Positions 43,042-61,889 of a DNA stretch of 64,000 nt are shown piece by piece. The stretch spans positions 62,001 to 126,000 of the forward strand of contig JAAPAO010000008.1 in NCBI GenBank assembly GCA_013115145.1, read 5' to 3'. The stretch's first letter is position 1. Each line of letters starts with the position of its first letter. Below the pieces are notes generated by a model. The model searched no databases and was not told where the DNA came from. It worked only from the letters and a program-made list of their open reading frames with translations. A program made the translations under genes and the position numbers. This DNA comes from Perkinsus chesapeaki ATCC PRA-425 (Eukaryota; Protista; Perkinsozoa).

Positions 43042-46000
43042 ATGTTTGGCTTCAATCCTTCTATTGGTCTGAGTAAATATCGTCCAGGAGGGTCTTCTCC
43101 CATCCTAGGCCTTCAAGCGGCTCCCAATGGCCGTGTTCTATCGGTGATCACTCGAGGTGGGCGAGAGGTAAGCTTCAAAGGCTGCTCGTTGGGTTGTTAT
43201 GAAATGTGTCGCTAGGCACAGTTTTATGCTGCTGGTTATCAACAACAGCAGGCTCCGATGTACCGTCTACGTACGGCAGCCTCTATGCTGGGATCGACAC
43301 TACAGGAGGGCAATTCCAAACAGTCGGGCTCTGACTTGGATTCTGGCGACGAGAGCATGACCTTTACTGGGTACTATAGAAAAGATTCTTTTCGAGGTTG
43401 AATTCCGTCCCGTGTTTAGGCTGCATGCATGGTCCGGTGATTCGACTCGGGTATTTTTACAGTTGTCGACTCGGCATTTGGTTGCGGTCTTCCGAGTACG
43501 GTTCGGTGATGACGGTTTTAAAAAGGGGGCTGATTATGACTATGATGAGGCTGATACAGATTATGATGATGAAGGTGGGACAAAAAGGCATGTTAGGTGA
43601 TAATGGGGGGGACATGGGCACGGTGTGTGAGGCTCGGTCAGGTCTCATCAGCTGCGACAGCTTCCCTGTCATATTGAGCTTGAGTGTACGCTTAGTGTCC
43701 CTACGGAAAAGTTCTCACTCTTGCCTGGTGCTGGCAATCGACTTTTTATAGTATCATCACCGACAGAAGTATCATCAAGTAGCATGATTCTATTGCTGGA
43801 CACTGATAACTACAGGCAGCGTGCGCCCAAGGTCGACCTATCTGTACTAAAGCGAGGCCCAGGGGCCATCCTCGCCTTTGAAGAGTGTCGCTGTCTAAGC
43901 CAGATAGCGGACTCCTTCATAGCTGGCCATCCCGATAGCGGCCTCCGGAACCGTGTGGTAGCGACGTCTGCATCGGGAGGACCAAGCGGCGTTATTGCCG
44001 TCAGCGTAGTGATAGAGGGTACATCGGAAGTATGGCTGCTGCGAGACAGGCCAGTAGAGGGGAAAGGCGGTTGCGGATTGGGCCGAGTTCTCTCGGTATC
44101 GGGCAGTTGCAGCTGCGTCGCACTTTCCGGGGATTGCCTGGCTGTTGCCCTTACTGGTGGAGTTGTTGATCTTTATAATATACAGGATCCACAGGACACC
44201 CTAGAGCTAGCCCACCTGTGTCGGATAAAATCATCTGATCTCTTATCAACGACCGAAGAGCTCCCACCAAAGCTGCCAGTTAGCGGCCTGACGTGGGCCG
44301 GCGATCGGGTCCTATTGGTCCATACTGGGGTCGGCCTTGGTGCCGTCTCTGTGGATGGTGCCAGGCTTGGATGCTTTACTCATGGATGTGGCCCTGTTAA
44401 GTTCGCCGCCGGTAGCACAAGCTATCTTTGGGCATGTGTCGTGACCTTTAATGAGCCAGAGATTGCTAAGTTCCCCGCCGTGGTGGAGCATCCCTCCATG
44501 TTGACCGGTTATGGTGATGACGTCAGCTGTCCTTCAGTGCCGTTATTGGCATCTCATGAGCGAATGCTTTTGCCAAAGGCATCGTCTAGTACGTGGAAGG
44601 CAGTGCATTACCCTCACATGTACATGCGTACCAATTGGCCACCGCGTGTGTTCGCTGGTCGCCCCGGCCACTGGATCATGGTCTGTGGCGAGTTCGGCTT
44701 CGTGGTTTATAGTTACCTCAGGGATAAATGGAGGTTGTTTGGTGACGTGGCTCATGAGGGCTTGGTTGGTCGAGTTCGGGCAGCCTGCAGTCTAGGGCAA
44801 TACGGCGTAACTTTGAATAGCAGTGGCTTGTTGGTAGTCTGGGACATGGGTGCCAGGCTGGACTATTATACAGCAAAGCTGGCTAGTGTAGAGGCTGCAG
44901 ACGCTGCTGAGGTGAAGGCAATGGCGACATCTGAAGATTTCCAAGTGGTACTGGCAACCCTTACTGAGGCCACTTCATATCGCTATAATGGGCCGGGTGA
45001 TTTCACGGTCGGCAAGAGCGTCCGTTTGGATGCCCTGCCAAGTCCTTTAAGAGAAGTGCAGCTGTTCCGAGATGACAGCGGAGGCATGGTATTGCTGGCA
45101 CTCTTACGGAACGGTGAAGTATTCAGAGAGCAGGACAGTGGGTCGATGAAATTCGTAAGAGTGTGCGGCGGTGTTCGACGAATCTTCGTGTTCGAGCCTA
45201 CGGAGCGAAATCAGAAATCCCAACTGGAGATATCTAAGAGCTCGTCTACGGATGCGCCTGCTACTGGTGGATCGGAGGAAGATGCGTCTAGCTCTATTTC
45301 ACCGTTAACTTACAGAGGATTTGGCGGGCCTTTTATGATACCACAAACCGCGTCGTCTGTAGGAGAGAGCAGGCAGGGGAAGACGGGTAATAATAGGGGG
45401 CTTGAGTGGCGTGGATGGACTTCTGGGGGGCTTCGGCGTCAGGAGCCTCAGGGCCATTCAATCGGTCAATCAGTTAGTATAGATATTAATATATGGGAAA
45501 CCGAGAACTGATAGCATAATGGTGCAGTGTAGCGGATACTAGTAGCTATAAGATTTCACTGTATGGTTTACTTGTAGCATGTAGTAGTAGGAGTACTGTA
45601 ATAAGTTGTATAGGATGTTTATATAATATTAAACCAACATTCAGGAGTGCTCGTTCATGTTGGGTTACCTTTAGGTGTTGGACAATCTACATCAGACGAG
45701 ACCTCTGATGAGAGCCAATCGGTGGTAATGACAGGATACCGTTCTGTCCACCCGTTGCCAGCCCCGTCTCTGTCCCTTCCTATAGCCAGTCGTAATCAGA
45801 CCAATGAGGAGGCATCATCCTCCTCTCCTCGATTCGACCTGCCTATCAGCGGTCACGAGGACACAGCGAATGCAGCGGAGCTGTTTACACCATCTCATGT
45901 AAAGGTGGTCAACTACTCCAAAAGCAGCAAAGACTCGACGACATTGGGCAAGGTGGAGGTGCCACCTGATGAAAAATGCCCTTTCTGTAAGGATGTCTGT

Positions 46001-47379
46001 ACAGTGGACCTCGCTACTAGTTACTATGATAATAGCCCGAGGGCCGTCTCGGAGCTTGCTTCGGTACTGGATAGAGCCCAAGTGTGGATGGAAGATCAAG
46101 CTGGCTTGTCGCTGTGGATAAATGGCTCCTTCTTTGCCACCCGTATACCGATCGATTCACCGAGTGCCGCTGTACTTTGTGTATACCCTTCACAGGCATC
46201 TTTTCGAGTAGTGCTTCCCAAGCAGTCATGGAGCTTGGTAACTGCTCCTCTGTATCATACTCTACTCCATAGGCTTTGTAGTGCTCCTGGTAACCGTCTA
46301 CTTCGAACTGCTTATAATGTGTCGTGCACGGTGTATTCAGCCAAGGAGTTCAGAGTAGTCCTCGAGCTCCTCCTCCACGAGTCGATCGATGCCTGTGTAC
46401 CGATATTCCTACGACTTGATAAACTAGGGGTAACCGATGTCAATGCTGTCCATCATCACAGCCCAGTTAACATGCGTCTCCGTACATTACGGAATGCCTT
46501 GCATCTGGTCGGTCATTTCGGTCCTTCTGGGGTTGACTATTTGGTAGCGGCCTTGCGTAAAACAGAGCCTCATGTAAGCTTCCGCCACGTTCTTGGTATG
46601 ATGGATGAAGGAGGCTCAGAGAGGGTAGCGCCCGAACTATTCCGTAGCGCTTTAAAGGCCGGCAGACTCTATCAGGCTGCTGCACTACTACTTCTGGTAC
46701 AGTACTCCGCGGGCCCTGAGACTGCCAGGAAGGACTATGCGTTACCACTGTTAAAGGCGGCTTTAGACGCCGGCGAAAAGTCCCTTGCTGAGCAATGCAT
46801 TAGATTCTATTCGGCAATGGGAACGGACCGTCCTCCAGAAGTGGTGAGCTGCGTCCGCGAGTACTGTATCAAGTTGGTGGTCGATTGTAAATGGGTGGAC
46901 CTACTTAATTGCTTTGGCGCTGACGGCACCGCAAGAGAATTCCTGGAGGGGGTCCCCGAGCCCACAGTTGTCCAGTTCAACTCGGTGGTTCGGTCTTTCA
47001 GGGCTCTTATGATATGTGATAGAGAGCCTGGAGAGACCAAAGACAACGTTGGAATAGTGCAGATAGCAGCTGATGAAGGAAGTGATGATACTTCTACAGA
47101 GGGTGGAGGGTAGGTTGTCTCGCTGACGGCTGATGCTGATTTACTACTGTTGTCAGGTCACCATCAGATAACGCTGGTCTGCATGTATCGAGGCAGCTTT
47201 TCTTATTGTTTCTGTCTATTGGTTGGTCACGTCGTGTCCTAGCTATGTGTGTAGCATCGAGAGATCCTCGGTCATTGGCCTTTGCTATGGGCAGGGACCC
47301 GATGGTCAAGGAGATGTGTGCAGCTGAAGGAAGTGACGAATGTCGATCGCTGTTGCACGGTGCCCTAAGCTCTGTTTAA
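43042..47379 (+). CDS. RIC1: RIC1 (Rab6/Ypt6 GEF subunit): beta-propeller region plus C-terminal RIC1 domain
   Basis: C-terminal FRVVLELLLHE, YLVAALRKTE, LFRSALKAGRLYQAAALLLLVQ, LLKAALDAGEKSLAEQCIRF match RIC1-domain motifs (HxLELLLH, ARKTE, L.TAA.YL). The N-terminal region is beta-rich (HYPHMYMRTNWPPR, WRLFGD). Confidence 0.8.
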
Positions 47380-47501: not shown

Positions 47502-50500
47502 ATGATCCGCTCCGGGATCGTTCTTTCCACGGAGCCTTCTTTTGGTGGGGTGTACGCTGATTCCGAGACGGAACGACCATCGTCACCTGCAAGTGGGCCA
47601 CAGATGGGTAACGGTCCTATAGGCTTGTATATCGCTATTAGTGTTCACCACGTAGGGCACATGGACAGTCGAAGTAGTATGGCGTCGATGTTGCGAGAAG
47701 CCAAGTCGAAGGACGTTTTATCACGATCTGAATTGCTGAGGATAACCAAGGCATATGAGGAGGCGGAGACGGAAACTAAAGACGTGAACGCTGGCGAGTA
47801 TCTTTTCCTTGGTAAGCTGATTGAAGGAAGTTATATTATTGTGTGGAAATACATTCGCATTAGGTAATTTCACAATGCAGTTTTGGAATGCATTTAATAA
47901 CTGGAACTTCCGTTATTGGGTATGCTTATTATTTGTTGGATTCGCCGTTTACACTGGTGAACATTTATCTACTTACTTCTTAACAAAAGCAGCAATCAGC
48001 CAGAACCAAGAGACAATGGGGCTATTTACATCTCCTTTTCATACGTGGATTGGATACTTCTACTTCATTATTGGTCCAGTAAGCTACACAGTATCAATCT
48101 CGTCGCAGTGTCTTTCTTTCAGCTGATGCTTTTCCTCGGTGGCGTCCTGTTGTTGCTCAACCCCTACGTCAAGCACACTCACACCATAGTAGCTTACTCT
48201 ATCATACTTACGCTCATTTGTGAATTTGTATGTGTCGTGGGAGATCCATACACATTCACATGCACGAGGGCTATGCCAATTCCTATGGTGCTATTCCTGG
48301 CCTGCATGAGCTCGAGACTTTTCCCCAGTGTCAGCTTCCTAGCAGTGGCACTCTATATGGGAGGTAAGCGTCACCTCCTCTGACGCATTTCCAGCTTGGA
48401 GGACTCTCACAGGTATACCCTTTCAGGTACGGACATTGCCCTAATAGTGTACTCCTCTTCTGGTGAGTATACGGCCCCCTATATTATGATGATATGGGCC
48501 GGTGTTCTATGTCATTGGTTTGTAAGCTCAACAATATCCTTCCCATATCTTTTATTATTCCTTTTCATTAGGTATTCGGTCTGTGTCTGGTTGGTAGCGG
48601 TAATCTGCTCCGTGCCCAATCTGATCTATTCTCCCTTATGATGGATAGATTACAGTTTAAAGAGAGAGATGACGGTGCTTATGATTTGGGAATACATGTA
48701 GGTCTCGTGGCCTGATTGATATATGTTAATTTCGGAGGCTTATCGGGTGAACTGCCTTTTTTCATCTTAGGCTGTCAGCCAACCTATGTTGAAGTACTTC
48801 GAAGATAATTATAAAGCAGCTTATGCAAAGTGTTTCAGAAGCAAAGTGGACGAGAAAGAGTAGGACTCACTGCAGGGCTTCATATCTGCAGCTAGCTGCT
48901 CGCAAACTTCGGTCATTGTTCCATAACCTTCCTGTTGGGGAATTTCTCATACCTCAACATCTATCGTTCCTTTCCTCTCTTTTATTAGTACCTAGCCTTG
49001 CTGCTGTAATGCTCCTACTTATTCAGATACAGTCTATGGGCTAGGTCCCGTCAAACATTCTGGATAACCCGACATATGAGATGGGCCATCGTAGGCGTTG
49101 TCTTGTAAGATATGGCTCTTCTAATTGGCCTCATATGTTATCCGTAGGTTGATCGCTGCTATGATATTCGTAGCGGCTGATTTTCATGAAGGTCCTAATG
49201 GCAACGCTGCTGGTCCAGTAGCAGGAGTTGTGGTAGGCACTTTCGGCAAGCTGTAATTCCCATTGATCATCCTGATCTTCGTTCAGGTACAAGTCTTGAG
49301 CGCGTTGGTCTTACTCATCGCAGTGTGTCTGTGTGTGATATCATTCGGGAAGCCTCGTCTTCTATTATCTGCCTCTGTACTGTTCTTTGTATCGGCTGCT
49401 ATGTTCTCCTGTGTATATATCTATAACTATGGTAGAGCATTCCAGGCGGTAAGCTCTTTGTGCATCGTGTCACAAGGCGATTTTGTTTTAATATCAGTGG
49501 AAAGACGATGCCCCCGACGTCACGCACTATGGCCCAGTCATGACCCGTATGGTGTGGGCAACCGATCCTGTAAGCTCCTTATCAGCCACTAATTGCAATT
49601 CTTTACCGTAGGGCCTGTTTACCATAATAGCAACTCATGTGACCATGTCGGATATTGGCGCCCTACCGCTGCTCTTCATCGATGTATTCGTTACCACTGG
49701 CGTCATTCTGAGGTGAGACTCGTGTAGCTTTAGGAAGCTGTGCAATAATATGGCGGTTCTGTGCGGATATGGGTCGATTGGGTTTCTCTCAGTTCTGAAT
49801 TCTGGTTGGAGCATCCCTCCAGCTTGTTGTCGATGGCCGACTTAGTCAACTATCTCATTATCATTGCAGCCGGTAGGCCTCGTGAAAAGCACATCGCTTG
49901 AATATATGCGGTTATCTTCTTTCAGCGTTCTTGTATACATTAAATCTTGAAAGCCATTGGCGCTTACTGTGGGCTATGTCCCGTGATAGAGTGCCAACAT
50001 CTCCAGATACGTATGTATCTGTAGAAGGATGTGCCACTGAATTCAGTACCAAAACTATGTACTATTTCCGAGTCCATCAAGGAGGAAGTAGATATTCGTT
50101 GCCACTTAAGCTACACCGGTTCCTGGGATAGGTTCATATTTATCATTACAGTCTACCCAGAAGTTGAGGGATATACTCGTGAAAGATGCGGAGCAAGAGC
50201 CTCACGAGTGGCAACAGTAAAGTCTAGAGGCATGTCGCAGGAATAGCTAGGTCGGTCCTGCAGATATATATGCCTAAGTTTTGATAACCTTGATCATGCT
50301 GGTGAAGGTGTTATTGAGACTAGAATGCATAGATTACAAGTTGTTATTAATGGTATTGTTAATCGTCGTCCAGATCTGGTAAGTGTATAATAATAATGAT
50401 TAATCATTCCTTTAATAGGTATCAAAGATGTTTCCTCGTCCTGAGGGTAATCATGTACCTAGAATGAATATTACTCTTATTGATGTTGGCAGTCGTGGTG

Positions 50501-53500
50501 ATGTCGAACCATATATTGCCATTTCCAAGGTATAAATCTCACGTTCTTCTTCGAATGGAAGTGTTGGATCTGTCTCAGGAACTGAACGCAATGGGTCATC
50601 ATTGTCGTCTCTGCACGCATGAGAAATTCCGAAACGTTATTGAGAAGAACGGTATAGAGTTTTTCCCAATGGCACTCGATGCCCCCGGCCACTGGCAGCC
50701 TGAGACGTTGATGAAGTAAGTATACTTCGAATAGTCGGCACCAGTTGTCTATATTTAGGATTGCCTCTGAGAGCCCCTCGTGGAATCCGGGATTCCTTGT
50801 CAGCCCTCATGACATGAATTTTGTGCTTCACAATACGTCGTTGATGAAACAGTCTGTTCGCGAGCTTTTCTTCTTCCCTGGATGGGAGAAGGGCGACGTT
50901 GGAGCATGGGGCGCCGTTAAGAGTGAGAATCCGGTTGGTGGATTCGCTTCAACTTCACTCGCCACGATATTGCTTTTGGACTGGTCTTTGTGGTTTTAGG
51001 CGCTCCTGAAAAGCGATGGGTTACTCATGCTATGATATCTAATCCCCCCGCTTACGTTCACGTACACATTGCCGAGCGCCTAGGCGTGCCCCTTCATATG
51101 TACTTAATGAAGAAGATGGTATAACTAGTAGAACTGGACTCTATAGGTTCTTCCCAATGCCATGGTCAAGAACGAAACTATTGGGGCATCCAATGAGTTC
51201 GAAGGAGCTTAACGATAATCCTTATTGGCGAGAGCTCAGCTACAGTTGGTTCGATCAGGTATACGTGATGCATTAAGTGCTTGTCGTTTACTTCGTATAT
51301 TTCAGATGCAATGGCACGGAATGTCCGCTGCGGTGAATAAGTACCGTAAGAAAGTTTTACACATCCCTAAGATCGGCATGTGGCACAGTGCTGGATCCCT
51401 ATTAGAAGAATGGGGTGTAAGTGTGAATATTGTCAATCACGTCTCATTCTTGCATAGGGGCTGTATTACGATAGGTGTTGTTGTTTTAGGTACCATTCTC
51501 ATACTGCTTCTCACCGTCACTCTTCCCAAAGCCGCCAGATTGGGGCCCGAATATCGAGATCACCGGTGTATGCTCCAATGGAAGTAGACAGTCATTCCGT
51601 GACGCTTGAGGCGTTCAGGGATCTTATCAGGTATAGAGAATACAACATACAATCCTCCGGCGGATCTTGCCAACTTCTTAAGCAACGGACCTAAGCCCTT
51701 CTATATTGGCTTTGGCAGTATTAGTGGTGATCTCACTTACATGTAAGGCCTAATTATGTGGCGCAGTGACGCTAAATGCTACTGTTCAGATATAAACCGA
51801 TCTTGCAAGCCGTCAAGAAAATGCCCAATTTGAGGGTTATAGTCCAGAAAGGTTGGTGCGACCTCAACGGCGTCTCCGCTGAGGACTTCACATCCATACC
51901 AGGTATCTAGCGCATCTCCTATCCGTGGTTACATTTGCCTTCAGATTTCCAAAAAAGAGTGTTCCTAATCGCTGCTCCACCCGAGCGCTGTCCTAAGTGC
52001 CGTAGACCCAGGGCTTCATTCACGCAGTAAGCTTCTTTTCTATTGTGAAAATACGGCAGCGCTTGGGCAATTTCGAAGGCAGCTAGTTTCGTGGAAGTGG
52101 TGAGTGATGATCTCTCATTTGTCAGTAATGGTTTATTCTGTGATGAATGTGATGGTTCATCAATAGAGGATGCTGAAGGGACGTGGGAATACGATATGTT
52201 GAAAGCATTAGGATCTGATAATATATCCTTCTTATCTGGTATTTATATTAATATTATATAATAATAAATACTTCCCTCCAACAGGTATACCACATGATTG
52301 GCTATTCCCTAAATGTTGTGCTGTAATGCATCATGGCGGTGCTGGTACCACTGCTATGGGTTTGGACTTCGGCCTTCCTACCTGTATTATTGCATTCTTT
52401 GGAGACCAATGGATCTGGGGTGAGAGCTGCTGGCGCGATCCTTTCCCGTATATAATCAAGCCCTACTGTAGCGTTTCTCAACATGTTCGTCCTAGGTGGC
52501 CTGGTTGAACTACAAGGAGCTGGTAAATTCCTTAGGAGGGATAGGGTCAACTCAGAGAACATGAAGGCCTCTCTGGAATTTGCCCTCACTGATGGAGCTC
52601 GGGCGGCTGCCAAGAGATTGCAAGGAGAGTTCAAGGTGAGCGGATATCTGCACTTCTTGGCTGCTTCGTAGCATTCTACTGTATTGTTAGGATGAGCGAG
52701 ATCGAGGTATGGGTGCTCATGAAGCAGCTCTTAGTTTCCAACGTCAATTACCATTAGAGCTAGTTACTTGTGAATTATGTAGAGTAATGGCTCGATGGGA
52801 ACCAGATATGTCATATAGGCCAAGAGCAGCTGAATATCGTGATACAGTTAGAGATATTGGTTTATGTAATATAATATTATTAACCATAATAATATATTAG
52901 TTATATTCAGGTCCGGTATGTGCTGTTACATTAGCTGAATCTGAAGGATTAGTAGTAGCACCATTCCGAACAGCTGATTGGGGCAGGACCAGAGGAGGCA
53001 TCCTTTATGTTCATTTCGTAAGTAGACGAGTGTGTCTTCTTGTATTTAACTCTACGTCAGGTAAGAGCGCTGAAAGCTTCTACTAGGCTTTTTAAACGCA
53101 TGGTTCAAGGCGGTCAGACAGGAGGAGTATACGGCTTCTTCATTGGTAGTCTTTCCCCGATTTGCGATTTCCTTTCGCAATCGACAATCAGGTGTCATGG
53201 CGGGCATACTAGAGTTCATTGTATTCATTGTATGTGCGCCATTCGTGTTTGTACGTGATAGCTGGAGAGTAGCCACTCAGCTGGCACAGGGGACAGCAGG
53301 TGATGTAGTTCGCCTGTGCGCATTTAGTTCAGCCAATGCTTGTGGTTCAGACGGTCGTCAGCTTGGTGGCCGTGACACGAAGACAGCTGATGCGGAACTG
53401 CTTAACGGACTGGTAAGTGGAGCTAGGGGTTTGTGGGAGATCCGCTCGTGTGGCAGGTATTAATCGATGATAAGAATTATGGTGATGTCCGCGCGGTTCC

Positions 53501-53834
53501 AGCTAGCACGTTAGAGAGCGACGATAAAGAACTTGACGAGGAGGAGTTTGCCTTCTTGCTTCACCGAACTGAGAGGGCGCTTTCGGAGCTGGAAAATAAG
53601 TAGGCTGTATCTTACTGACGCGTGACTTATCGGTGTTACTTGCTTAGCCGGTCGCGTGTACATAGAATGACAGAGGCAGTTTGTCAACTGTTTGAACGTC
53701 GTGGTGTGGGTATGGAATTCACAGCGAAGACTGCCTATCAAGAGCCCTTATTGAATCCAGGGGATAAAGTCCTTGCGGAAGAGGAATCAAAAGTGACTGA
53801 TAATAGAACTAAAGTCACCATAAGGGGAGCATAG
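47502..53834 (+). CDS. Multi-pass membrane domain + PX-like + ATG26/UGT80-type sterol 3-beta-glucosyltransferase fusion, copy 1
   Basis: In-phase GT-AG joins link hydrophobic exons to PRMNITLIDVGSRGDVEPY, FPMPWSRT, PPADLANFLSNGPKPFYIGFGS, GIPHDWLFPKCCAVMHHGGAGTTA, FFGDQWIWG and GAHEAALSFQRQLPLE. One short exon near 48.9-49.0 kb could not be placed unambiguously. Confidence 0.8.
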
Positions 53835-54218
53835 GTGAACTATCGACGGATGAGCTGGGGATTCCTTTGTGTTAGCTGTCCCCTTTCTAGGTGATCTGGA
53901 CGATATATAACGTGTTATGATTCATGCTTGGGGCGTGTGGTTGATGAGCTCTCCCTGTACAGCATATCATATTTGCAGGCATTAAATCCGAGCTGTATCA
54001 TAGCCACTGTAGAAATGCTTCGAAGTTTTCGCTCTTTTCGTACTTCCACGATCCTAAGTTCAGTCTCGGATCCTGAGTCAGTTAATTTATTTCTTCCCAA
54101 TATGCTTACTTTTCACTTTCCACCTTCCATAACTCCATGGTGTTGTGTGGTATCCCTAACTTGGCATTCTTAACCTTCAGTATTCCATTCGAATCAACAA
54201 CCGTCTCGGGTCAACACA

Positions 54219-57200
54219 ATGATTCGAGCATTCCTTGCTCACTCCCCTATAGGCTCGTTCGGTGGAGTTCACACTGATATAGAAGGCACCACGAGGGCGC
54301 CTCTTTCCCGTTCCAATACCAGTAAGTATCGTCAGCAGTTTCACCAGATCGGGTATGATAGAGTTTCCGTTTCGTTTTGTTAAGGTCATCAGCGCTTGGC
54401 GAATACCTCCGAGCTCCGCAAGGCTGGATCGGATGGAAAGCTATCTCAGTCTGAGCTGCTAAGAATCAAGAAAGCATATGAAGAGGCTGACAGCGAAACT
54501 AAAGACGTGAACGCTGGCGAGTATCTTTTCCTTGGTAAGCTGATTGAAGGAAGTTATATTATTGTGTGGAAATACATTCGCATTAGGTAATTTCACAATG
54601 CAGTTTTGGAATGCATTTAATAACTGGAACTTCCGTTATTGGGTATGCTTATTATTTGTTGGATTCGCCGTTTACACTGGTGAACATTTATCTACTTACT
54701 TCTTAACAAAAGCAGCAATCAGCCAGAACCAAGAGGCAGCGGAGATGCTTACATCTCCATTTCAATCATTGGCTGGATACTTCTACTTCATTATTGGTCC
54801 GGTAAGTTTTTAGAATTCTTTAAAATCTTATAATCTCCTATTCCAGCTAACGCTTCTCGTCGGTGGCGTAGTGTTGTTGCTCAACCCGTACGTAAAGCAC
54901 ACTCACACCATAGTAGCGACATCTATACTACTGACGCTATTCTGTGAATTCGTATGTGTGGTTGGAAGCCCCGATACCTTCACGGCTATGAGGCCTATGT
55001 CGGTTCCTATGGTATTATTCCTTACGTGCATGAGTTCAAGACTATTTCCGAGTGTTAGCTTTCTGGCGGTTGCGCTATATCTTATTGGTAAGTGGTTGTT
55101 AGTACATCAGCAGTTACAATCACTTCTTTCAGGTATTGATTTCGCGTTGCTTGTATGCAGCTGCTCTGGTGGTTATACGCCTTCTTACAAGATGATGATT
55201 CTGGCCGGTGTTCTATGTCATTGGTTTGTAAGCTCAACAATATCCTTCCCATATCTCTTATTGTTGCTTTTCATTAGGTATTCGGTCTGTGTCTGGTTGG
55301 TAGCAGTAATCTGCTCCGTGCTCAAGCTGATCTATTCTCTCTTATGATGGATAGATTACAGTTTAAAGAGAGAGCTGACGGTGCTTATGATTTGGGAATA
55401 CATGTAGGTCTCGCTACTTCTATGCCTTTATACTTTACCCTAATTCTCCTTCGTTCGGAAGTAACCAACAATGGAAATATGCCGCAATATTTTTTAGGGT
55501 GTAAGCCTCCCGATGCTGAGCTATTTCAAAAATAATTACACAGCACCAATCTCACATACATTCGACTCTAATGTCGATGAGAAAGAGTAAGTATGGGCCA
55601 GCTCCCATTCTACTAGCTGTATCGTAAAGTCACTTTACGCTACACTACACTTTACTAAAGTGTATTGAGTGTGTACTTGCATCGCCGCCAGGTATCACTT
55701 ATGGGCAAGATCTCGGCAGACCTTCTGGATTACCCGTCATATGAGATGGGCAGTGGCCGGTGTCTTGCTGTGAGTCCTCGCAGGCTGTCAACTCGTTTTA
55801 ATGCGTACCGGCTTTTAGACTGGTTTCGGCAATGATTTTTGTCGCTGTCAACTTCCATGGCCCGCTGAACGGCAACACTGTGAGTATGGTATCCGGCGTA
55901 GTGGTAAGCCAGCCACGGGTATCCTATGATCCCTGCTTTTATGCCTCGTCCAGGTTCAAGTGGCGAGTGTTCTACTCCTATTCATAGCGGTCTGCCTGAC
56001 AGTCGTATCGTTCGGCAAGCCGCGCCGTCTTGTAGCCGCTGGCCTCTTGTTCTTTGTATCGTCGTCTCTCTTCTCCTGCGTCTACGTCTACAACTTCGGA
56101 CGGGCTGTAGAAGATGTAAGTTGCCTCTCCACTCTCCACTATGGTTATATTTTCTCAATACCTCACTTGAGAGAGTGCTCTTATCATGCCACTTCGCTAA
56201 ACTCCGAAATTCTGATTCATCTCCGCTGGTGTACTGTATATTCGATACCAAGGCCCATAGCGAACCGTACAAGAAAAGAGTCTGTCACCCCGTAGACTGT
56301 GAAATCCGTACACTAAGATGCCATTCAGTGTTTTATCCTACGGGTAGCCAAATCAAACTGCTAACATTACTCTTTTTCAGCCTGGCTCTAATTCGCTCGG
56401 TCTTCACCGCTATGGCCCAGCAGTACTGAGAATGGTATGGGTAGCTGACCCAGTAAGTACTGTAGGCAGTATCGACACTGTGTACTTTTGGACTTTAGGG
56501 CCTCTCAACAATAATAGCTAGTCATGTTACAATGTCGGATATCGGTGCCGGGCGCCTTCTGCTTATCGATATTATTGTTACCATTGGTGTCATTGCAAGG
56601 TAGTATCCCCCATCCTAATTGCCCATCTTTTTTTGCTCAGTTCGTTGTTCTGGCTGGAGAACACCTCTGTGTTGTTGTCCATGACAGATTTAGTTAATTT
56701 CGTCATAGTCGTCGCAGTCGGTAGGCGGCATTGGAAGCACATCAATTGAATATATGCGGCTATTTTCTTTCAGCGTTCTTGTATACATTGAATCTTGAAA
56801 GCCATTGGCGCTTACTGTGGGCTATGTCCCGTGATAGAGTGCCAACATCTCCAGATACGTATGTATCTGTAGAAGGATGTGCCACTGAATTCAGTACCAA
56901 AACTATGTACTATTTCCGAGTCCATAAAAAGAGTGGTATGACCTTTACAGAATTTCGGGCCGAGATTATGCTGCTTTAGATTCCTATCTTTCCCTGCAGT
57001 CCACGAGAAGGTTGCGAGATCTTCTTGTGAAAGAAGCTGCCGAGAACCCCAAGGGCTGGCAGCAGTAAGATTACATACAGTGTGATCTGGTAGGACTTTG
57101 GCGGCTCTTGTAGGTACATTGACTTAAGTTTTGATAACCTTGATCATGCTGGTGAAGGTGTTATCGAGACTAGAATGCATAGATTACAAGTTGTTATTAA

Positions 57201-60200
57201 TGGTATTGTTAATCGTCGTCCAGATCTGGTAAGTGTACAGGTATAATAATAATGATTAATCATTCCTTTAATAGGTATCAAAGATGTTCCCTCGTCCTGA
57301 GGGTAATCATGTACCTAGAATGAATATTACTCTTATTGATGTTGGCAGTCGTGGTGATGTCGAACCATATATCGCTGTATCTCAAGTAGGACGTTCGGCT
57401 CCTGCGTATTCGTTCAATCCTAATCAAACTTTGTAGGAGCTCAACGCTATGGGTCATCATTGCCGCATTTGCACCCATGATAAATTCCGTGATGTAGTGG
57501 AAAAGGAAGGTGTCCAATTCTTTCCCATGGCTCTTGATGCTCCCGGCCATTGGCAGCCAGAAGAGTTCATGAAGTAAGGACTGTCTAGGTAGCACCAGTA
57601 CAGCGCTAATGTCAGGCACGGTGCCGAGGGACCTTCGTGGAGCCCGAGCTTCCTGGTGAACCCATCGGATATGCTGTATATATTGCAGCATACTCCGGGC
57701 ATGATGGAATCCCTTCGAGAGATCTTTTTCCCTCCAGGATGGGAAACAGACAAGGTCGGGGCATGGGCAGCTGTAAAGAGTAAGCCTGATCTCGTACGGC
57801 ACCTTAAACGGAAACTGGCCCTTTGGTAGGTAATCGTGAAAGCCGTTGGACGACACATGCTATGATCGCCAATCCTCCCTCCTACATTCATGTTCATCTT
57901 GCTGAGCGTCTCGGAGTTCCCCTGCATATGTGAGCGAGTAGGTTGTCCATTAGGCAATGCCGCCGTAGGTACTTCTCTATGCCGTGGTCTAAGACCAAGA
58001 TACTGGGCCATCCGTTCAGTTCCAATGGTATGGACGATAATCCGTATTGGCGTCTACTCAGCTATCGCTGGTTCGATCAAGTAAGTTGAGTATGTCACCT
58101 ATATGGTAGGAATACCCCATCACATCAGATGCAATGGCGTGGTATAGCAGCGGTAGTGCCGAAATTCAGAGCAGAGGTCCTACACATTCCCAAGATAGGC
58201 ATGTGGCATTCAGCTGGATCGCTGTTAGAAGACTGGGGGGTGAGCTCTGCTGCATGTACTAGGTCATTGATTTCAGCAGGTTCCGTTCTCATACTCGTTC
58301 TCCCCGACACTCTTCCCGAAGCCTCCGGATTGGGGCCCGAATATCGACATTACAGGATTCTGCACTGGACCAGGTGAAACTCTTACAATGCATCATGAAC
58401 TAAATGGAAATCATGTCAGATGAGGATAAGGCGAGCTATAATCCTCCGGCGAATCTTGCCAACTTCTTAAGCAGCGGACCTAAGCCCTTCTATATTGGCT
58501 TTGGCAGTATTAGTGGTGATCTTACTTACATGTAAGGCCTAATTATGTGGCGCAGTGATGCTCTATGTGGCTGTTTAGATTTAAGCCTATCTTGCAATCT
58601 GTTAAGGAAATGCCCAATTTGAGGGTCGTACTGCAGAAGGGTTGGTGTGAGCTCAACAGTATATCTGCTTCGGACTTCACCTCTATACCGAGTAAGGCGG
58701 ATAGTTACTCATTCTGTCTGGGGCTCGCCGGCTTGTCGTATTCTTGTCTTGTTAGACTTCAAAGAGAGAGTATTCTTTATTTGCACGCCTCCTGAGCGTT
58801 GCCCGAAATGTGGCAGGAAGCCGGATGCATACTCACAGTAGGTTAACCATCTGATCGGCTGTCACTGGGGGATCGATCATGAGCTATAATGGAGTGGTGA
58901 GTGATGGTTTCTCATTTTTCAGTAATGGTTTATTCTGTGATGAATGTGATGGTTCATCAATAGAGGATGCTGAAGGGACGTGGGAATACGATATGTTGAA
59001 AGCATTAGGATCTGATAATATATCCTTCTTATCTGGTATTTATATTAATATTATATAATATTAAATACTTCCCTCCAACAGGTATACCACATGATTGGCT
59101 ATTCCCTAAATGTTGTGCTGTAATGCATCATGGCGGTGCTGGTACCACTGCCATGGGTTTGGACTTCGGCCTTCCTACCTGTGTTATTTCATTCTTTGGA
59201 GACCAATGGATCTGGGGTAACCTCCATATCGCGGGCTTGACCAAAATCCCTTCCTTCAGGTGGCCTCCTTGAGCTTCGCGGTGCTGGGCGTTGCATACAT
59301 AGAGATAACGCCAGTGTGAAAACCATCCGCCCGGCCTTGGAGGGCTGTATGACGAAGGAAGCTGTCGCTGCCGCTAAGACGTTGCAAAAGGGCTTGCTGG
59401 TAAGTTGGACAGTTGTGGAGTTCATTGCAGCATTTTCCTGTATTGTTAGGATGAGCGAGATCGAGGTATGGGTGCTCATGAAGCAGCTCTTAGTTTCCAA
59501 CGTCAATTACCATTAGAGCTAGTTACTTGTGAATTATGTAGAGTAATGGCTCGATGGGAACCAGATATGTCATATAGGCCAAGAGCAGCTGAATATCGTG
59601 ATACAGTTAGAGATATTGGTTTATGTAATATAATATTATTAACCATAATAATATATTAGTTATATTCAGGTCCGGTATGTGCTGTTACATTAGCTGAATC
59701 TGAAGGATTAGTAGTAGCACCATTCCGAACAGCTGATTGGGGCAGGACCAGAGGAGGCATCCTTTATGTTCATTTCGTACGTTTTAGCATTATGCATTGA
59801 TGACTCCGTTAACTGTCATCTTCACTACAGGTTAAGGCTCTTGGTGCCGCAACGGCAGTTTTCAAGAGTATGATCCAAGGCGGTCATACTGGGGGAGTGT
59901 ATGGCTTCTTCATTGGTAAGGAATCGCTCTTGAACTAGGAGAACCATCACCCGTATCTCAGGAATTGTCGCCGGCATTTTCGAGTTCCTTGTGTTCATCG
60001 TTCTCGCTCCATTTGTCTTTATTCGTGATAGTTGGTGGGTAGCCACTCAGTTGGCTCAAGGAACTGCAGGTAGGGCGCTCAAGCTTGGTCAATATGTACT
60101 GAATGATATCATCAGACGGTCGACAGCACGGTGGATTCGATACTAAGTTGTGTGACAGGGAACTCCTTGAAGGAATGGTCAGCAGGGATACGGATAACGT

Positions 60201-60627
60201 TACGATTTTGTAGGTGGTATTGTCTTTAGGTTGTGGTACATGATGAAGCAAACCACGACATCCGGGCTGTTGCAAAAGATACACTGAAGGAGGATGATGA
60301 AGTGCTAAGTGCAACAGAGACAACGAAATTGACGGAGAGGACAGAGAGAGCCCTCAATGAGCTAGTACAGAAGTAAGGTGCCCTAGGAGTTCAGCAGCAG
60401 TCGACTAGCTATCCCGTCTCAGCCGATCTCGAGTACAGAGAATGACCGAAGCGGTCTGCCAGCTGTTCGAGCGTCGTGGAGTCGGTATTGAGCTCACAGC
60501 TAAGAACGCGTATGAAGAGCCGCTGATTGAGCGGAAGATGATAATAGCCGCTGAAGACGATGAAGCTACGAGTAGTGTCGAGACAACACCTGAGGCTCGC
60601 CCTTCGGTACCTGATATGGCAGAGTAG
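54219..60627 (+). CDS. Multi-pass membrane domain + PX-like + ATG26/UGT80-type sterol glucosyltransferase fusion, copy 2 (tandem paralogue)
   Basis: Start MIRAFLAHSPIGSFGGV aligns with copy 1 MIRSGIVLSTEPSFGGV. Same exon chain and motifs (VGSRGDVEPY, PHDWLF, HHGGAGTT, FFGDQ), ending ...ARPSVPDMAE. Confidence 0.8.
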
Positions 60628-60890: not shown

Positions 60891-61889
60891 ATGTTGAGTT
60901 CGGTTATCGATTTTACTGATTGGGCCTGCAGCTTCGGGGTACTTTCTTCTACCGTTATGACACAATGGTCCAGCACAGTGCCGCCCGGGTGGCAAATTGT
61001 TTCAGCTCAGGATACCAAGCCGTACCGACAAGCATATACTTTACGAGATCGAGTGGTTCCTATAAAAACCGGCCTACCCCCTGCCAGGCCAAGGATGAGC
61101 TTGTTAGGCGGAACGTATAGGCGCCATTGCTCTAAGTGCCCCGAATACTCCTATACAGACCCCACAGCATTGCGGCAGCATTGCAAGAGCGAGTGGCACG
61201 TTGACAATGTGAAAAGGTCTCAGAGTGGCTTGGCGCCATTAAGCTACGAGGAGTGGTTACAGCTGTCTTTGGCATCTGACTCTGAAGAGCCCACTGAGGT
61301 CGATTCTGAGGAGGAAGAAGCCGAGGAATTCTCTGAACCGGAGATTAATGGTTTTATAATGGATAATTATCCATGGAAGATTCTAACTAACTGCTCGCCG
61401 AGGATAGCGCTCGCTTCGACAATAGATCCTGACGTTTGGGCCAGCTCAGAAATAGTGGTCGTTTTACTCTTCCGGAGCGGGAGGTTTGCCGGATGTGTCT
61501 GGGATGGTGATGGTAAAGTTATAGAACATACGACCTTTAAAAAGTGCACAGTTCGACGGAAACAAGGCGGAGCTCAGAGAAACTTCGAACAAGCTAAGTC
61601 GATGGGCGCGTTTATGAGGCGAACGCAGGATGCCAAGATCAGAGAGGATGTCTCCGAGTTGATATCCGACCGATGGCGAGAGTATCTATCCAATCCAAAA
61701 GCGTTAGTCCTAGTTGGCTCCCCAAGGCAGGATCAGAACTCTGTCTTCGTGGGGCCATTGAAGAATGGCTACAAGGACCCTAGGGTGGCTAAGGTGCCAC
61801 TGACATTCAGGGCACCGACGTTCACTGAGACCTTGAGGGTATATGATGTATTGATGCGGGTAATGGTCGAAGTGCCCCCTGATGATTGA
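60891..61889 (+). CDS. VMS1: Vms1/ANKZF1-like protein: C2H2 zinc finger + VLRF1 domain, intronless
   Basis: HCSKC...LRQHCKSEWHVDNVKRSQSGLAPLS (Vms1/Rei1-type ZnF); VLLFRSGRFAGCVW, HTTFKKCTVRRKQGGAQ, SMGAFMRR, DPRVAKVPLTFRAPTFTE. The ATG at 60957 is an alternative start. Confidence 0.85.
   Translation: MLSSVIDFTDWACSFGVLSSTVMTQWSSTVPPGWQIVSAQDTKPYRQAYTLRDRVVPIKTGLPPARPRMSLLGGTYRRHCSKCPEYSYTDPTALRQHCKSEWHVDNVKRSQSGLAPLSYEEWLQLSLASDSEEPTEVDSEEEEAEEFSEPEINGFIMDNYPWKILTNCSPRIALASTIDPDVWASSEIVVVLLFRSGRFAGCVWDGDGKVIEHTTFKKCTVRRKQGGAQRNFEQAKSMGAFMRRTQDAKIREDVSELISDRWREYLSNPKALVLVGSPRQDQNSVFVGPLKNGYKDPRVAKVPLTFRAPTFTETLRVYDVLMRVMVEVPPDD

What the first reader, a model, noticed from the sequence alone, without database searches (positions are those of the whole stretch)
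47502..60627. Tandem genes fusing a ~12-TM (6+6) membrane domain to a sterol-glucosyltransferase
Seen: in both copies the hydrophobic 5' exons splice in frame into the glucosyltransferase exons. About six hydrophobic segments, a polar loop (DRLQFKE...VDEK), about six more, then a linker and the GT-B enzyme. Known: plant UGT80 enzymes are not polytopic, and fungal Atg26 uses soluble PH/GRAM domains. Inference: the membrane domain may sense, transport or present a lipid acceptor (e.g. host-derived sterol) coupled to glucosylation. The segments after TM6 (LLRAQSDLF) and TM12 (LESHWRLLW) recall the juxtamembrane E..R..FL helices of 2x6TM nucleotidyl cyclases, which would make this a sensor with a glycosyltransferase output. 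That similarity is by eye only.
Basis: partly seen in the sequence, partly recalled or inferred. Interest (0 to 1): 0.8.

Follow-up and report, generated by a model that had tools for sequence, protein, structure and literature searches.

The report
Membrane-embedded sterol glucosyltransferase gene pair
Two neighbouring genes of the oyster-clam parasite Perkinsus chesapeaki each really do encode one long protein that joins an orphan 12-helix membrane domain and a PX-like domain to a sterol-glucosyltransferase-type enzyme, an undescribed architecture seen so far only in Perkinsus and a few unidentified environmental protists.

Summary
The window is Perkinsus chesapeaki. Two tandem 36-exon genes lie at 47502-53834 and 54219-60627 (GenBank "hypothetical proteins", 1452 and 1455 aa). 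Each encodes: a cytosolic N-terminus, about 12 transmembrane helices (6 + loop + 6), a roughly 110-aa module, a GT1 UGT80/UGT51-type glucosyltransferase, and a Cys-rich plus hydrophobic C-terminal module.

The fusion is not an annotation artefact.
- Exon lengths and phases are conserved across the junction in a P. olseni orthologue and in a 43%-identical paralogue.
- The junction module is under purifying selection (dN/dS 0.09).
- Three environmental relatives carry the whole architecture as single uninterrupted intronless ORFs.

RNA contigs confirm only one 5' splice. The membrane-to-enzyme junction itself has no transcript evidence.

The membrane domain has no Pfam, PDB-sequence or detectable outside relatives, and no detectable internal repeat. 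Its only recurrent fold match is the membrane domain of adenylyl cyclases. That match rests on a low-confidence model and scores within noise, so it is a lead only.

Function of the membrane domain (lipid presentation, sensing, flipping or anchoring) remains inferred. This is a new variant of a known enzyme kind.

The parts
47502..53834 (+). Copy 1 gene (FOL47_010379, P0001, 1452 aa): 36 exons, 35 GT-AG introns
   Evidence: Exact protein-to-genome mapping. The protein was identified.
47884..49954 (+). Copy 1: exons encoding the roughly 12-helix membrane domain (aa 95-545; six helices, charged loop aa 280-357, six helices)
   Evidence: Hydropathy, predicted helices, loop charge bias. No Pfam or PDB sequence match. 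Coordinates.
50000..50445 (+).
   Evidence: Fold matches to many PX domains, Z 9.3-9.6, rmsd about 3 A, about 100 aa. hhalign to the chromerid N-module gives 93.8%, E 1.8e-7. dN/dS 0.09.
50452..52804 (+). Copy 1: GT1 glucosyltransferase domain (aa 668-1202) with GSRGDV and HHGGAGT...FFGDQ motifs and a CPKC...CDEC insert (51989-52150)
   Evidence: Pfam Glyco_transf_28 and EryCIII-like_C. UGT51 5xvm/5gl5 at E 1e-54. Motif positions.
52769..53274 (+). Copy 1: C-terminal module: CELC...CPVC, an R..DW motif, and a Gly-rich hydrophobic stretch (aa 1278-1314)
   Evidence: Hydropathy. Homologous to the C-terminal module of the Platyproteum relative, BLASTP 5e-8.
54219..60627 (+). Copy 2 gene (FOL47_010380, P0007, 1455 aa): 36 exons. 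It is the positional counterpart of P. olseni P0006, since both lie next to bVLRF1
54607..56802 (+). Copy 2: membrane-domain exons
   Evidence: Alignment A1. Coordinates.
56848..57301 (+). Copy 2: PX-like domain exons. The conserved splice is 56935^56980; the deposited model uses 56906^56951
57308..59563 (+). Copy 2: GT1 domain exons
54535..54586 (+). Copy 2 intron between exons 2 and 3 (equivalent to 47812-47863 in copy 1), seen removed in an RNA-run contig
   Evidence: read laying shows a joint that skips 52 nt with GT..AG ends. The contig's 5' loose end equals copy 2 at 54445-54474.

Best explanation
Each gene encodes a single polytopic membrane enzyme.

Proposed layout. The N-terminus lies in the cytosol. 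Twelve helices cross the membrane (6 + cytosolic loop + 6). The chain re-emerges in the cytosol as an extended helix after TM12, then a PX-like domain, then a UGT80/UGT51-type GT-B glucosyltransferase. A C-terminal zinc-ribbon-like and hydrophobic module touches the membrane again.

Proposed reaction. The enzyme most likely transfers glucose from cytosolic UDP-glucose to the 3-OH of a membrane sterol. In Perkinsus that sterol would be taken from the host.

Proposed role of the membrane domain. I read it as more than an anchor: a lipid-binding module that holds the catalytic cleft at the bilayer and delivers the lipid acceptor to it or gates access. Any coupling would pass through the conserved juxtamembrane helices after TM6 and TM12.

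Shown: one ORF, the domain identities, purifying selection on every part, a single evolutionary origin of the fusion, and splicing of one 5' intron.

Inferred: topology, sugar donor and acceptor, and any coupling between the membrane domain and catalysis.
For: One ORF.
- Relatives P0010, P0011 and P0013 are uninterrupted ORFs of 1237-1309 aa on intronless contigs. They align over the membrane domain, the PX-like domain and the GT.
- Exon lengths across the junction (162, 85/106, 115, 111 nt) are kept in P. olseni P0006 and in the 43%-identical paralogue P0003, although intron lengths differ widely.
- The Met in 'KMFPRPEG' is Leu in the paralogue, so there is no conserved internal start.
- dN/dS for P0001 against P0007 is 0.16 for the membrane domain and 0.17 for the GT. 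For P0001 against P0006 the junction module gives 0.09.

Enzyme identity.
- Pfam hits lie above their cut-offs.
- UGT51 matches at E 1e-54, with the GSRGDV and HHGGAGT..FFGDQ motifs aligned. All seven membrane-bearing members keep both motifs.

Topology.
- All six predicted outside loops are net acidic, and the inside loops are net basic or neutral.

More than an anchor.
- Invariant polar residues lie in or at helices across proteins only 20-24% identical: E193, R224, Q399, D474.
- The juxtamembrane positions Q287, D296 and R548 are also invariant.

Single origin.
- The seven membrane-bearing proteins form one group on the GT tree with SH-aLRT 100.

Biology.
- P. marinus is reported to need dietary sterol and has sterol-GT ESTs (PMC2868825).
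Against: - No transcript spans the membrane-to-GT junction. The only RNA contigs cover 47.75-48.0 and 48.49-48.52 kb.
- Perkinsus uses spliced-leader trans-splicing (my own knowledge), so an internal mRNA start cannot be formally excluded.
- The acceptor is untested, and this clade sits on a long branch (0.96) away from characterised sterol GTs.
- The membrane domain has no recognisable transporter or sensor signature, and its model is poor (pLDDT 47-58).
- Conserved polar residues could serve folding or oligomerisation rather than lipid binding.
- Twelve helices is a count from hydropathy and a weak model. Helices 10 and 11 (aa 476-512) could be one long or re-entrant segment.
Confidence: 0.5

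Rival explanations
1. Passive anchor or targeting device. The fusion is real, but the 12-helix domain only fixes the glucosyltransferase in a particular membrane. It would replace the PH/GRAM or peripheral binding used elsewhere, with no lipid handling or regulation.
For: - Relatives without the membrane domain (Chromera, Vitrella, Platyproteum, oomycetes) already carry membrane-binding modules: a PX-like domain and a Gly-rich amphipathic C-terminal stretch. Membrane recruitment is therefore the recurring theme of the family.
- There is no transporter or sensor signature.
Against: - Twelve helices and a conserved 75-aa loop are far more than anchoring needs.
- The domain is as constrained as the enzyme (dN/dS 0.16 against 0.17).
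- It keeps invariant intramembrane E, Q and D residues across 20-24% identical proteins.
Confidence: 0.22
2. Receptor enzyme. The 2x6-helix domain is a ligand (lipid) sensor of the kind proposed for membrane adenylyl cyclases. It would switch the glucosyltransferase on or off through the helices that extend from TM6 and TM12.
For: - AC9 and AC5 are the only recurrent fold matches of the membrane part. They span both halves in order: 7pde_A has Z 10.3 with 250 aa aligned; 8sl3_A Z 9.1; 9u3s Z 8.0 with 317 of 425 aa aligned.
- The model extends TM6 and TM12 by about 15 residues into the cytosol.
- Language-model neighbours include clusters with AC_N, MASE2, MASE8 and 6TM_PilS.
- Membrane domains of mammalian adenylyl cyclases are reported to be lipid receptors (PMC11606603).
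Against: - Z lies below the tool's stated noise level for helical bundles (about 13).
- rmsd is 5-11 A, and the model's pLDDT is mostly under 60 in the helices.
- There is no Pfam AC_N hit and no profile hit to any PDB sequence.
- No 6+6 internal repeat is detectable.
- There is no cyclase-transducer or catalytic cyclase domain.
Confidence: 0.15
3. Synthase-translocase. The membrane domain moves lipid across the bilayer, either by taking up or extracting host sterol for glucosylation or by flipping the steryl glucoside product to the outer leaflet. This would be analogous to transporter-enzyme fusions such as bacterial LplT-Aas (my own knowledge).
For: - The 12-helix 6+6 topology with a long central cytosolic loop is typical of secondary transporters.
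- There are conserved intramembrane acidic and amide residues.
- A sterol-auxotrophic parasite has a use for such a device.
Against: - There is no Pfam transporter family hit at E up to 1.
- No MFS, ABC or RND structure appears among the fold matches, apart from one partial ABC row at Z 6.6.
- The two halves show no detectable similarity.
Confidence: 0.1
4. Annotation artefact. Two adjacent genes (a membrane protein and a glucosyltransferase) were wrongly merged by gene predictors and by the first reader.
For: - No RNA read crosses the junction.
- Both chesapeaki copies have an in-frame ATG just before the GT ('KMFPRPEG').
Against: - The intronless relatives are single ORFs.
- The junction module is a conserved, selected, folded domain in frame with both neighbours.
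- That ATG is not conserved.
- Exon phases are conserved in a 43%-identical paralogue.
Confidence: 0.03

Closest known systems
Sterol 3-beta-glucosyltransferases of CAZy family GT1 (plant UGT80A2/B1; fungal UGT51/Atg26, PDB 5gl5/5xvm)
   Same: - GT-B enzyme with a Glyco_transf_28 N-half and a UDP-sugar-binding C-half.
- GSRGDV and HHGGAGT...FFGDQ motifs.
- E 1e-54 to UGT51.
- Thousands of relatives are named sterol glucosyltransferase.
   Different: - No PH or GRAM hit is found here.
- This clade has a 12-helix N-terminal domain, a PX-like domain, a Cys-rich insert inside the GT and a C-terminal module.
- It sits on a long separate branch.
- Activity is untested.
Chromerid, Platyproteum and oomycete GT1 relatives (P0018-P0021, P0027, P0026, P0015-P0017)
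   Same: - The GT domain is 30-37% identical.
- The N-module before the GT is homologous to the Perkinsus 'linker' (hhalign 93.8%). P0026 has a bona fide Pfam PX domain there (1.4e-17).
- The C-terminal CxxC..CxxC plus Gly-rich module is shared.
   Different: - None has the 12-helix domain.
- The oomycete proteins carry two GT domains in tandem.
PX (phox homology) domains of sorting nexins, Nischarin and CISK/SGK3
   Same: The predicted fold of aa 561-672 superposes on about 40 different PX structures over about 100 residues, with Z 8-9.6 and rmsd about 3 A.
   Different: - There is no Pfam PX match at E up to 10.
- The canonical phosphoinositide-binding R-[YF]-x-x-F motif is not evident in the alignment (by eye). 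Lipid-head-group binding is therefore unproven.
Membrane domain (2 x 6 helices) of class III membrane adenylyl cyclases (AC9 7pde/9u3s, AC5 8sl3)
   Same: - Twelve helices in two sets of six.
- TM6 and TM12 are predicted to continue as cytosolic helices.
- This is the only recurrent fold match of the membrane part.
   Different: - The match lies within noise for helical bundles and rests on a low-confidence model.
- There is no sequence similarity.
- There are no cyclase catalytic domains.
- The two halves are joined by a 75-aa loop rather than a C1 domain.

Membership tests
GT1 sterol 3-beta-glucosyltransferase (UGT80/UGT51 type) | GT-B two-domain enzyme recognised by Glyco_transf_28 (N) and a UDP-sugar-binding C-domain model above the curated cut-offs | tested here: met
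   PF03033 at 61 bits (cut-off 26.2) and PF06722 at 51.3 bits (cut-off 31.7).
GT1 sterol 3-beta-glucosyltransferase (UGT80/UGT51 type) | Closest solved relative is a proven sterol glucosyltransferase, with the N-terminal GSRGDV and C-terminal HHGG[AS]GT...FGDQ motifs kept | tested here: met
   5xvm/5gl5 at E 1e-54 with the motifs aligned. All seven membrane-bearing members keep them.
GT1 sterol 3-beta-glucosyltransferase (UGT80/UGT51 type) | Transfers glucose from UDP-glucose to the 3-OH of sterols | not testable with these tools
   An enzyme assay is needed. The clade lies on a long branch away from characterised enzymes.
Atg26-type sterol glucosyltransferase | PH and GRAM domains N-terminal to the GT | tested here: not met
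   A Pfam scan of the whole protein at E up to 1 lists no PH or GRAM domain.
PX domain | Three-stranded sheet followed by a helical subdomain (PX fold) | tested here: met
   On the predicted model (block-mean pLDDT about 60-86 across this part), Z is 9.3-9.6 and rmsd 2.8-3.1 A over 95-100 aa against Nischarin and CISK PX. About 40 further PX entries score Z 7-9.
PX domain | Sequence match to the Pfam PX model (PF00787) | tested here: not met
   There is no PX hit at E up to 10 for four membrane-type 'linkers' or for four chromerid/Platyproteum N-modules. P0026 does hit, at 1.4e-17. hhalign of the chromerid module against the P0026 PX domain is not significant.
PX domain | Phosphoinositide-binding basic residues | tested here: inconclusive
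   Invariant R602 and R641 exist, but their equivalence to the canonical Arg residues was not established.
Membrane adenylyl cyclase 2x6TM domain | Twelve helices as 6 + cytosolic segment + 6 | tested here: met
   Hydropathy and predicted helices. Helices 10 and 11 are the least certain.
Membrane adenylyl cyclase 2x6TM domain | Sequence or profile similarity to cyclase membrane domains (e.g. Pfam AC_N) | tested here: not met
   There is no such Pfam hit, and the profile against PDB sequences finds nothing at E up to 10.
Membrane adenylyl cyclase 2x6TM domain | Structural superposition clearly above background | tested here: inconclusive
   The best match is 7pde_A at Z 10.3, rmsd 7.5 A, 250 aa. 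This is below the roughly 13 noise level quoted for helical bundles, and the model's pLDDT is mostly under 60 in the helices.
Membrane adenylyl cyclase 2x6TM domain | Class III cyclase catalytic domains after TM6 and TM12 | tested here: not met
   There is no cyclase domain in the Pfam scan. A GT1 domain follows TM12 and a 75-aa loop follows TM6.
12-TM secondary transporters (e.g. MFS) | Family profile match, or two homologous six-helix halves | tested here: not met
   There is no transporter Pfam hit. The two halves are unrelated by BLASTP and hhalign, and no such fold appears among the matches. The weak model limits this test.

The most novel reading that the evidence does not exclude
The orphan 12-helix domain is a very divergent relative of the 2x6-helix membrane module of class III adenylyl cyclases, which has recently been argued to be a lipid receptor. 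Here it would be wired through a PX-like domain to a glycosyltransferase instead of a cyclase. That would make it a receptor enzyme whose output is steryl glucoside, letting a sterol-auxotrophic parasite adjust sterol glucosylation to the lipids it meets in the host.
Probability: 0.15. Interest if true: 0.85.

Novelty: new variant of a known kind. Interest (0 to 1): 0.62.

Why it matters
- Sterol glucosyltransferases are known as soluble or peripheral enzymes. A version built into the membrane through a conserved 12-helix domain would be a new solution to bringing a cytosolic sugar donor to a membrane sterol. It also gives a function-linked handle on an orphan membrane domain.
- Perkinsus species are major pathogens of oysters and clams and are reported to depend on host sterol. 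A lineage-restricted, duplicated, strongly conserved sterol-modifying membrane enzyme is a plausible player in host-lipid use and a parasite-specific marker.
- The family also traces a clear domain history: PX-like + GT + C-terminal module in chromerids, with the membrane domain added once in the Perkinsus-related clade.

Tried and rejected
1. **RNA proof of the junction.** Only two tiny runs of the species were offered. Their contigs cover 47.75-48.0 and 48.49-48.52 kb and confirm one intron, but not the junction.
2. **Pfam on single exons and on whole proteins.** Nothing was found for the membrane domain. The weak hits (FTR1, DUF4131, CrcB, DUF423) are all far below their cut-offs and I rejected them.
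3. **Sequence searches with the membrane domain.**
   - phmmer of a 166-aa stretch against 1.84 billion representatives gave 3 hits, all Perkinsus-like.
   - A region search and a profile search of 5.8 billion proteins found only Perkinsus.
   - The profile against PDB sequences found nothing.
   - Two scans of JGI metagenome contigs found only GT-domain relatives.
   - The environmental relatives were found only through the GT-domain search.
4. **Language-model neighbours.** These were unnamed membrane proteins plus AC_N, MASE and PilS-6TM clusters, which I treated as leads only.
5. **Structure prediction.** With 4 sequences it failed (pLDDT 46.6). With 7 sequences pLDDT reached 58.4 and was good only for the central loop and the PX-like part. 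Foldseek against the PDB gave nothing at E <= 0.001. The atlas search returned only PX-containing proteins at TM-scores of 0.2-0.3.
6. **Internal 6+6 duplication.** Not detectable by BLASTP or hhalign.
7. **Chromerid N-module against a bona fide PX sequence.** hhalign was not significant.
8. **Taxon of the environmental contigs.** The neighbouring ATP synthase gamma gene shows only that they are eukaryotic and mitochondrial-type.
9. **Separate GT gene starting at the ATG of 'MFPRPEG'.** Rejected, because that Met is not conserved and the upstream module is a selected, folded domain.
Full report
**What is there.** The stretch holds two head-to-tail copies of one multi-exon gene. blastn of 47.0-54.1 kb against 54.1-61.0 kb gives collinear matches of 69-83% identity.

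A phmmer search with a 166-residue in-frame stretch of the hydrophobic exons (window:54847-55344) against 1.84 billion representative proteins returned only three hits. The first, P0001, is GenBank KAF4677785.1, "hypothetical protein FOL47_010379 [Perkinsus chesapeaki]", 1452 aa. UniRef auto-names it "Sterol 3-beta-glucosyltransferase". This identifies the genome.

P0007 (FOL47_010380, 1455 aa) is copy 2. Mapping both proteins back by exact translation gives the following:
- 36 exons per copy
- 35 GT-AG introns per copy
- median intron length 48-49 nt
- copy 1 at 47502-53834 and copy 2 at 54219-60627

A splice-aware dynamic-programming model of my own, trained only on long ORFs of the window, found a similar path without the annotation. 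Copy 2 largely matches; several copy-1 exons were mis-predicted.

**Is the fusion real?** Gene predictions alone would not settle it, and RNA is almost absent. The two small runs of this species give contigs only at 47.75-48.0 and 48.49-48.52 kb. One contig skips 52 nt with GT..AG ends exactly at the predicted intron. Its 5' end matches copy 2 at 54445-54474, so copy 2 is transcribed and spliced there. Nothing reaches the junction. The case therefore rests on comparison, and that evidence is strong.

1. *Orthologue.* P. olseni has an orthologue (P0006, 1461 aa, 73% identical). All exon lengths are the same except the first two, the last, and two that differ by one codon. It lies next to the same bVLRF1 gene as copy 2.
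2. *Paralogue.* P. olseni also has a paralogue only 43-45% identical (P0003/P0005/P0008). Its introns are several-fold longer, yet the exons across the junction keep their lengths and phases: 162, 106 (85 in chesapeaki), 115 and 111 nt.
3. *Selection on the junction.* Between P0001 and P0006 the junction module (aa 546-665) has pS 0.63 against pN 0.12, giving dN/dS 0.09. It is coding in this frame. Between the two chesapeaki copies the membrane domain (0.16) and the GT (0.17) are equally constrained.
4. *No conserved internal start.* The in-frame Met just before the GT ('KMFPRPEG') is Leu in the paralogue.
5. *Intronless relatives.* This is the decisive point. A search with the GT region found three environmental proteins (P0010, P0011, P0013; 36-43% identical in the GT) that also align over the whole membrane domain and junction module at 20-24% identity.
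   - On their contigs (ENA assemblies, L003-L006) each is one uninterrupted ORF of 1237-1309 codons.
   - The surrounding genome is compact and intronless, with ATP synthase gamma, two DAGAT genes and a Upf1-like helicase as neighbours.
   - For P0013 the open frame continues upstream to a Met that restores helix 1 with the family motif DYLF..NLP.FFW..F..WNR.YW.

On a tree of the GT domain the seven membrane-bearing proteins form one group (SH-aLRT 100) on a long branch. The fusion arose once.

**Domain anatomy (P0001 numbering).**

*Residues 1-94.* Polar, with a conserved helix.

*Residues about 103-541: membrane domain.*
- Helices fall at about 103-125, 149-171, 178-198, 211-226, 228-250 and 256-279.
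- A charged loop spans 280-357. It contains a predicted hairpin and an amphipathic helix (EKEYSLWARSRQTFW).
- Six further helices lie at 358-380, 392-415, 420-444, 476-488, 491-512 and 519-541.
- All six loops placed outside by an N-in model are net acidic. The inside loops are net basic or neutral. This puts the N-terminus, the central loop and everything after TM12 in the cytosol, where UDP-glucose is.
- The count of twelve is the weakest point, because aa 476-512 could be one long or re-entrant element.
- Invariant positions across the seven proteins include polar residues in or at helices (E193, R224, Q399, D474) and in the helices that continue from TM6 and TM12 (Q287, D296, R548).
- The domain has no Pfam hit above noise, no PDB sequence relative, and no detectable similarity between its halves.

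- It is the best-predicted part of the model, with block-mean pLDDT mostly 75-86.
- It superposes on some forty different PX domains. Nischarin scores Z 9.4-9.6 and CISK 9.3. SNX5, 10, 16, 23 and 25 and p40/p47phox score about 7.7-9.1. The rmsd is about 3 A over about 100 residues.
- It is homologous to the module that precedes the GT in chromerid and Platyproteum relatives lacking the membrane domain (hhalign 93.8%, E 1.8e-7).
- One further relative (P0026) has a bona fide Pfam PX domain at that place.
- Pfam's PX model does not recognise the Perkinsus module, and the canonical phosphoinositide-binding motif is not evident. I therefore call it PX-like.

*Residues 668-1202: GT1 enzyme.*
- Pfam Glyco_transf_28 at 1.7e-16 and EryCIII-like_C at 1.6e-13.
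- UGT51 (5xvm/5gl5) at E 1e-54, with GSRGDV and HHGGAGT...FFGDQ aligned.
- A CPKC...CDEC insert is present.

*Residues 1190-1314: C-terminal module.* It holds CELC...CPVC, R..DW and a Gly-rich hydrophobic stretch. It is homologous to the same module in Platyproteum (BLASTP 5e-8).

The ancestral alveolate enzyme was thus PX-like + GT + C-terminal module. The Perkinsus-related clade added the membrane domain in front.

**How it probably works.** Three things are reasonably secure: it is a single polytopic protein, the catalytic part faces the cytosol, and it belongs to the sterol-glucosyltransferase branch of GT1.

Sterol as the acceptor is inferred from family membership and from Perkinsus biology. 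P. marinus is reported to need dietary sterol and to express three sterol-GT ESTs (PMC2868825).

For the membrane domain I favour a lipid-binding role (probability 0.5): presenting the acceptor or gating access to it. The reasons are that the domain is as constrained as the enzyme, keeps intramembrane polar residues over great divergence, and is far larger than an anchor needs to be. The rivals are:
- a pure anchor (0.22)
- a receptor-type regulator (0.15)
- a lipid translocase (0.10)
- an annotation artefact (0.03)

**The adenylyl-cyclase likeness.**
- Among solved structures the only recurrent match of the membrane part is the 2x6-helix domain of AC9 and AC5. The matches span both halves in order: 7pde_A Z 10.3, rmsd 7.5 A, 250 aa; 8sl3_A Z 9.1; 7pd4 8.9; 9u3s 8.0; 9u3q 7.7; 9u3v 7.3.
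- The model extends TM6 and TM12 into the cytosol, as in cyclases.
- Language-model neighbours include AC_N and bacterial sensor-domain clusters.

Against this:
- The helices are modelled at pLDDT mostly under 60.
- The tool's own calibration puts Z below about 13 for helical bundles within noise.
- There is no sequence signal.
- There is no cyclase domain.

It is a lead worth a proper structure, not a finding. It would be interesting because cyclase membrane domains are now argued to be lipid receptors (PMC11606603).

**Novelty.** I found no paper describing a polytopic, or a PX-linked, sterol glucosyltransferase. The proteins are deposited as hypothetical. The membrane domain is confined, as far as these searches reach, to Perkinsus and three or four environmental contigs. 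The enzyme kind is known; the architecture and the membrane domain are new. My verdict is a new variant of a known kind.

Noticed in passing
window 47790-47990, 48500-48660, 49900-50030, 50280-50470, 52100-52370, 52680-52970 (and the matching places in copy 2): Tracts of 99-100% nucleotide identity between the two copies, introns included, alternate with tracts of 50-70% identity. This looks like patchy gene conversion between tandem paralogues. The converted tracts cover helix 1, the TM6 and TM12 juxtamembrane helices, the end of the PX-like domain plus the GT start, the UDP-sugar motif and the second CxxC pair.
   Followed up: partly
window 56774-57064: The deposited model of copy 2 (P0007) splices 56906^56951, giving '...STKTIISGRDYAAL...'. 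The splice 56935^56980 gives '...STKTMYYFRVHKKS...'. That restores residues invariant in the family and the exon lengths 162/85 seen in copy 1 and P. olseni. The annotation is probably mis-spliced here.
   Followed up: partly
L003, L004/L005, L006 (ENA assemblies ERZ27280268, ERZ27263703, ERZ27280179, ERZ27280258): These are contigs of unidentified eukaryote(s) with no introns in the called genes and spacers of only about 20-180 bp. ATP synthase gamma lies divergently next to the membrane-GT gene in all of them. L004/L005 also carry two DAGAT genes and a Upf1-like helicase. The taxon is unknown, and such compactness is unlike Perkinsus.
   Followed up: partly
window 51989-52150 and 52769-52876: There are two CxxC...CxxC pairs: CPKC...CDEC inserted inside the GT C-half, and CELC...CPVC just after it. 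They look like zinc ribbons. Pfam gives only a faint rubredoxin-like hit at E 0.1. One environmental relative (P0011) lacks the first pair.
   Followed up: no
GT tree; L002: Copy 2 groups with the P. olseni orthologue P0006 (SH-aLRT 91) to the exclusion of copy 1, and both lie directly upstream of bVLRF1. The tandem duplication may therefore predate the chesapeaki-olseni split. The olseni contig ends 1.5 kb upstream of the gene, so a second olseni copy cannot be checked, and gene conversion blurs the signal.
   Followed up: partly
window 47995 (read laying, table 7): Two RNA-run contigs follow the exon up to 47995 and then continue with about 26-164 unrelated letters (CCGCCAGAAAGCTAACACTC...). 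These match neither copy at that place. They could come from a third paralogue, an allele or an assembly chimera. Unexplained.
   Followed up: no
P0009 (P. olseni FOL46_007645, partial): This deposited model joins the paralogue's GT and C-terminal module to an inorganic pyrophosphatase domain (PF00719). It looks like two neighbouring genes merged by the predictor.
   Followed up: no
window 45647-47113 and 60891-61889: The flanking genes are a RIC1 C-terminal solenoid protein (Pfam 1.2e-10) upstream and a bVLRF1 release-factor-like protein (1.3e-26) downstream. The downstream gene is syntenic in P. olseni.
   Followed up: no
P0015-P0017, P0021 (oomycete relatives): The oomycete proteins of this GT1 branch carry two complete GT domains in tandem separated by the Gly-rich module.
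   Followed up: no
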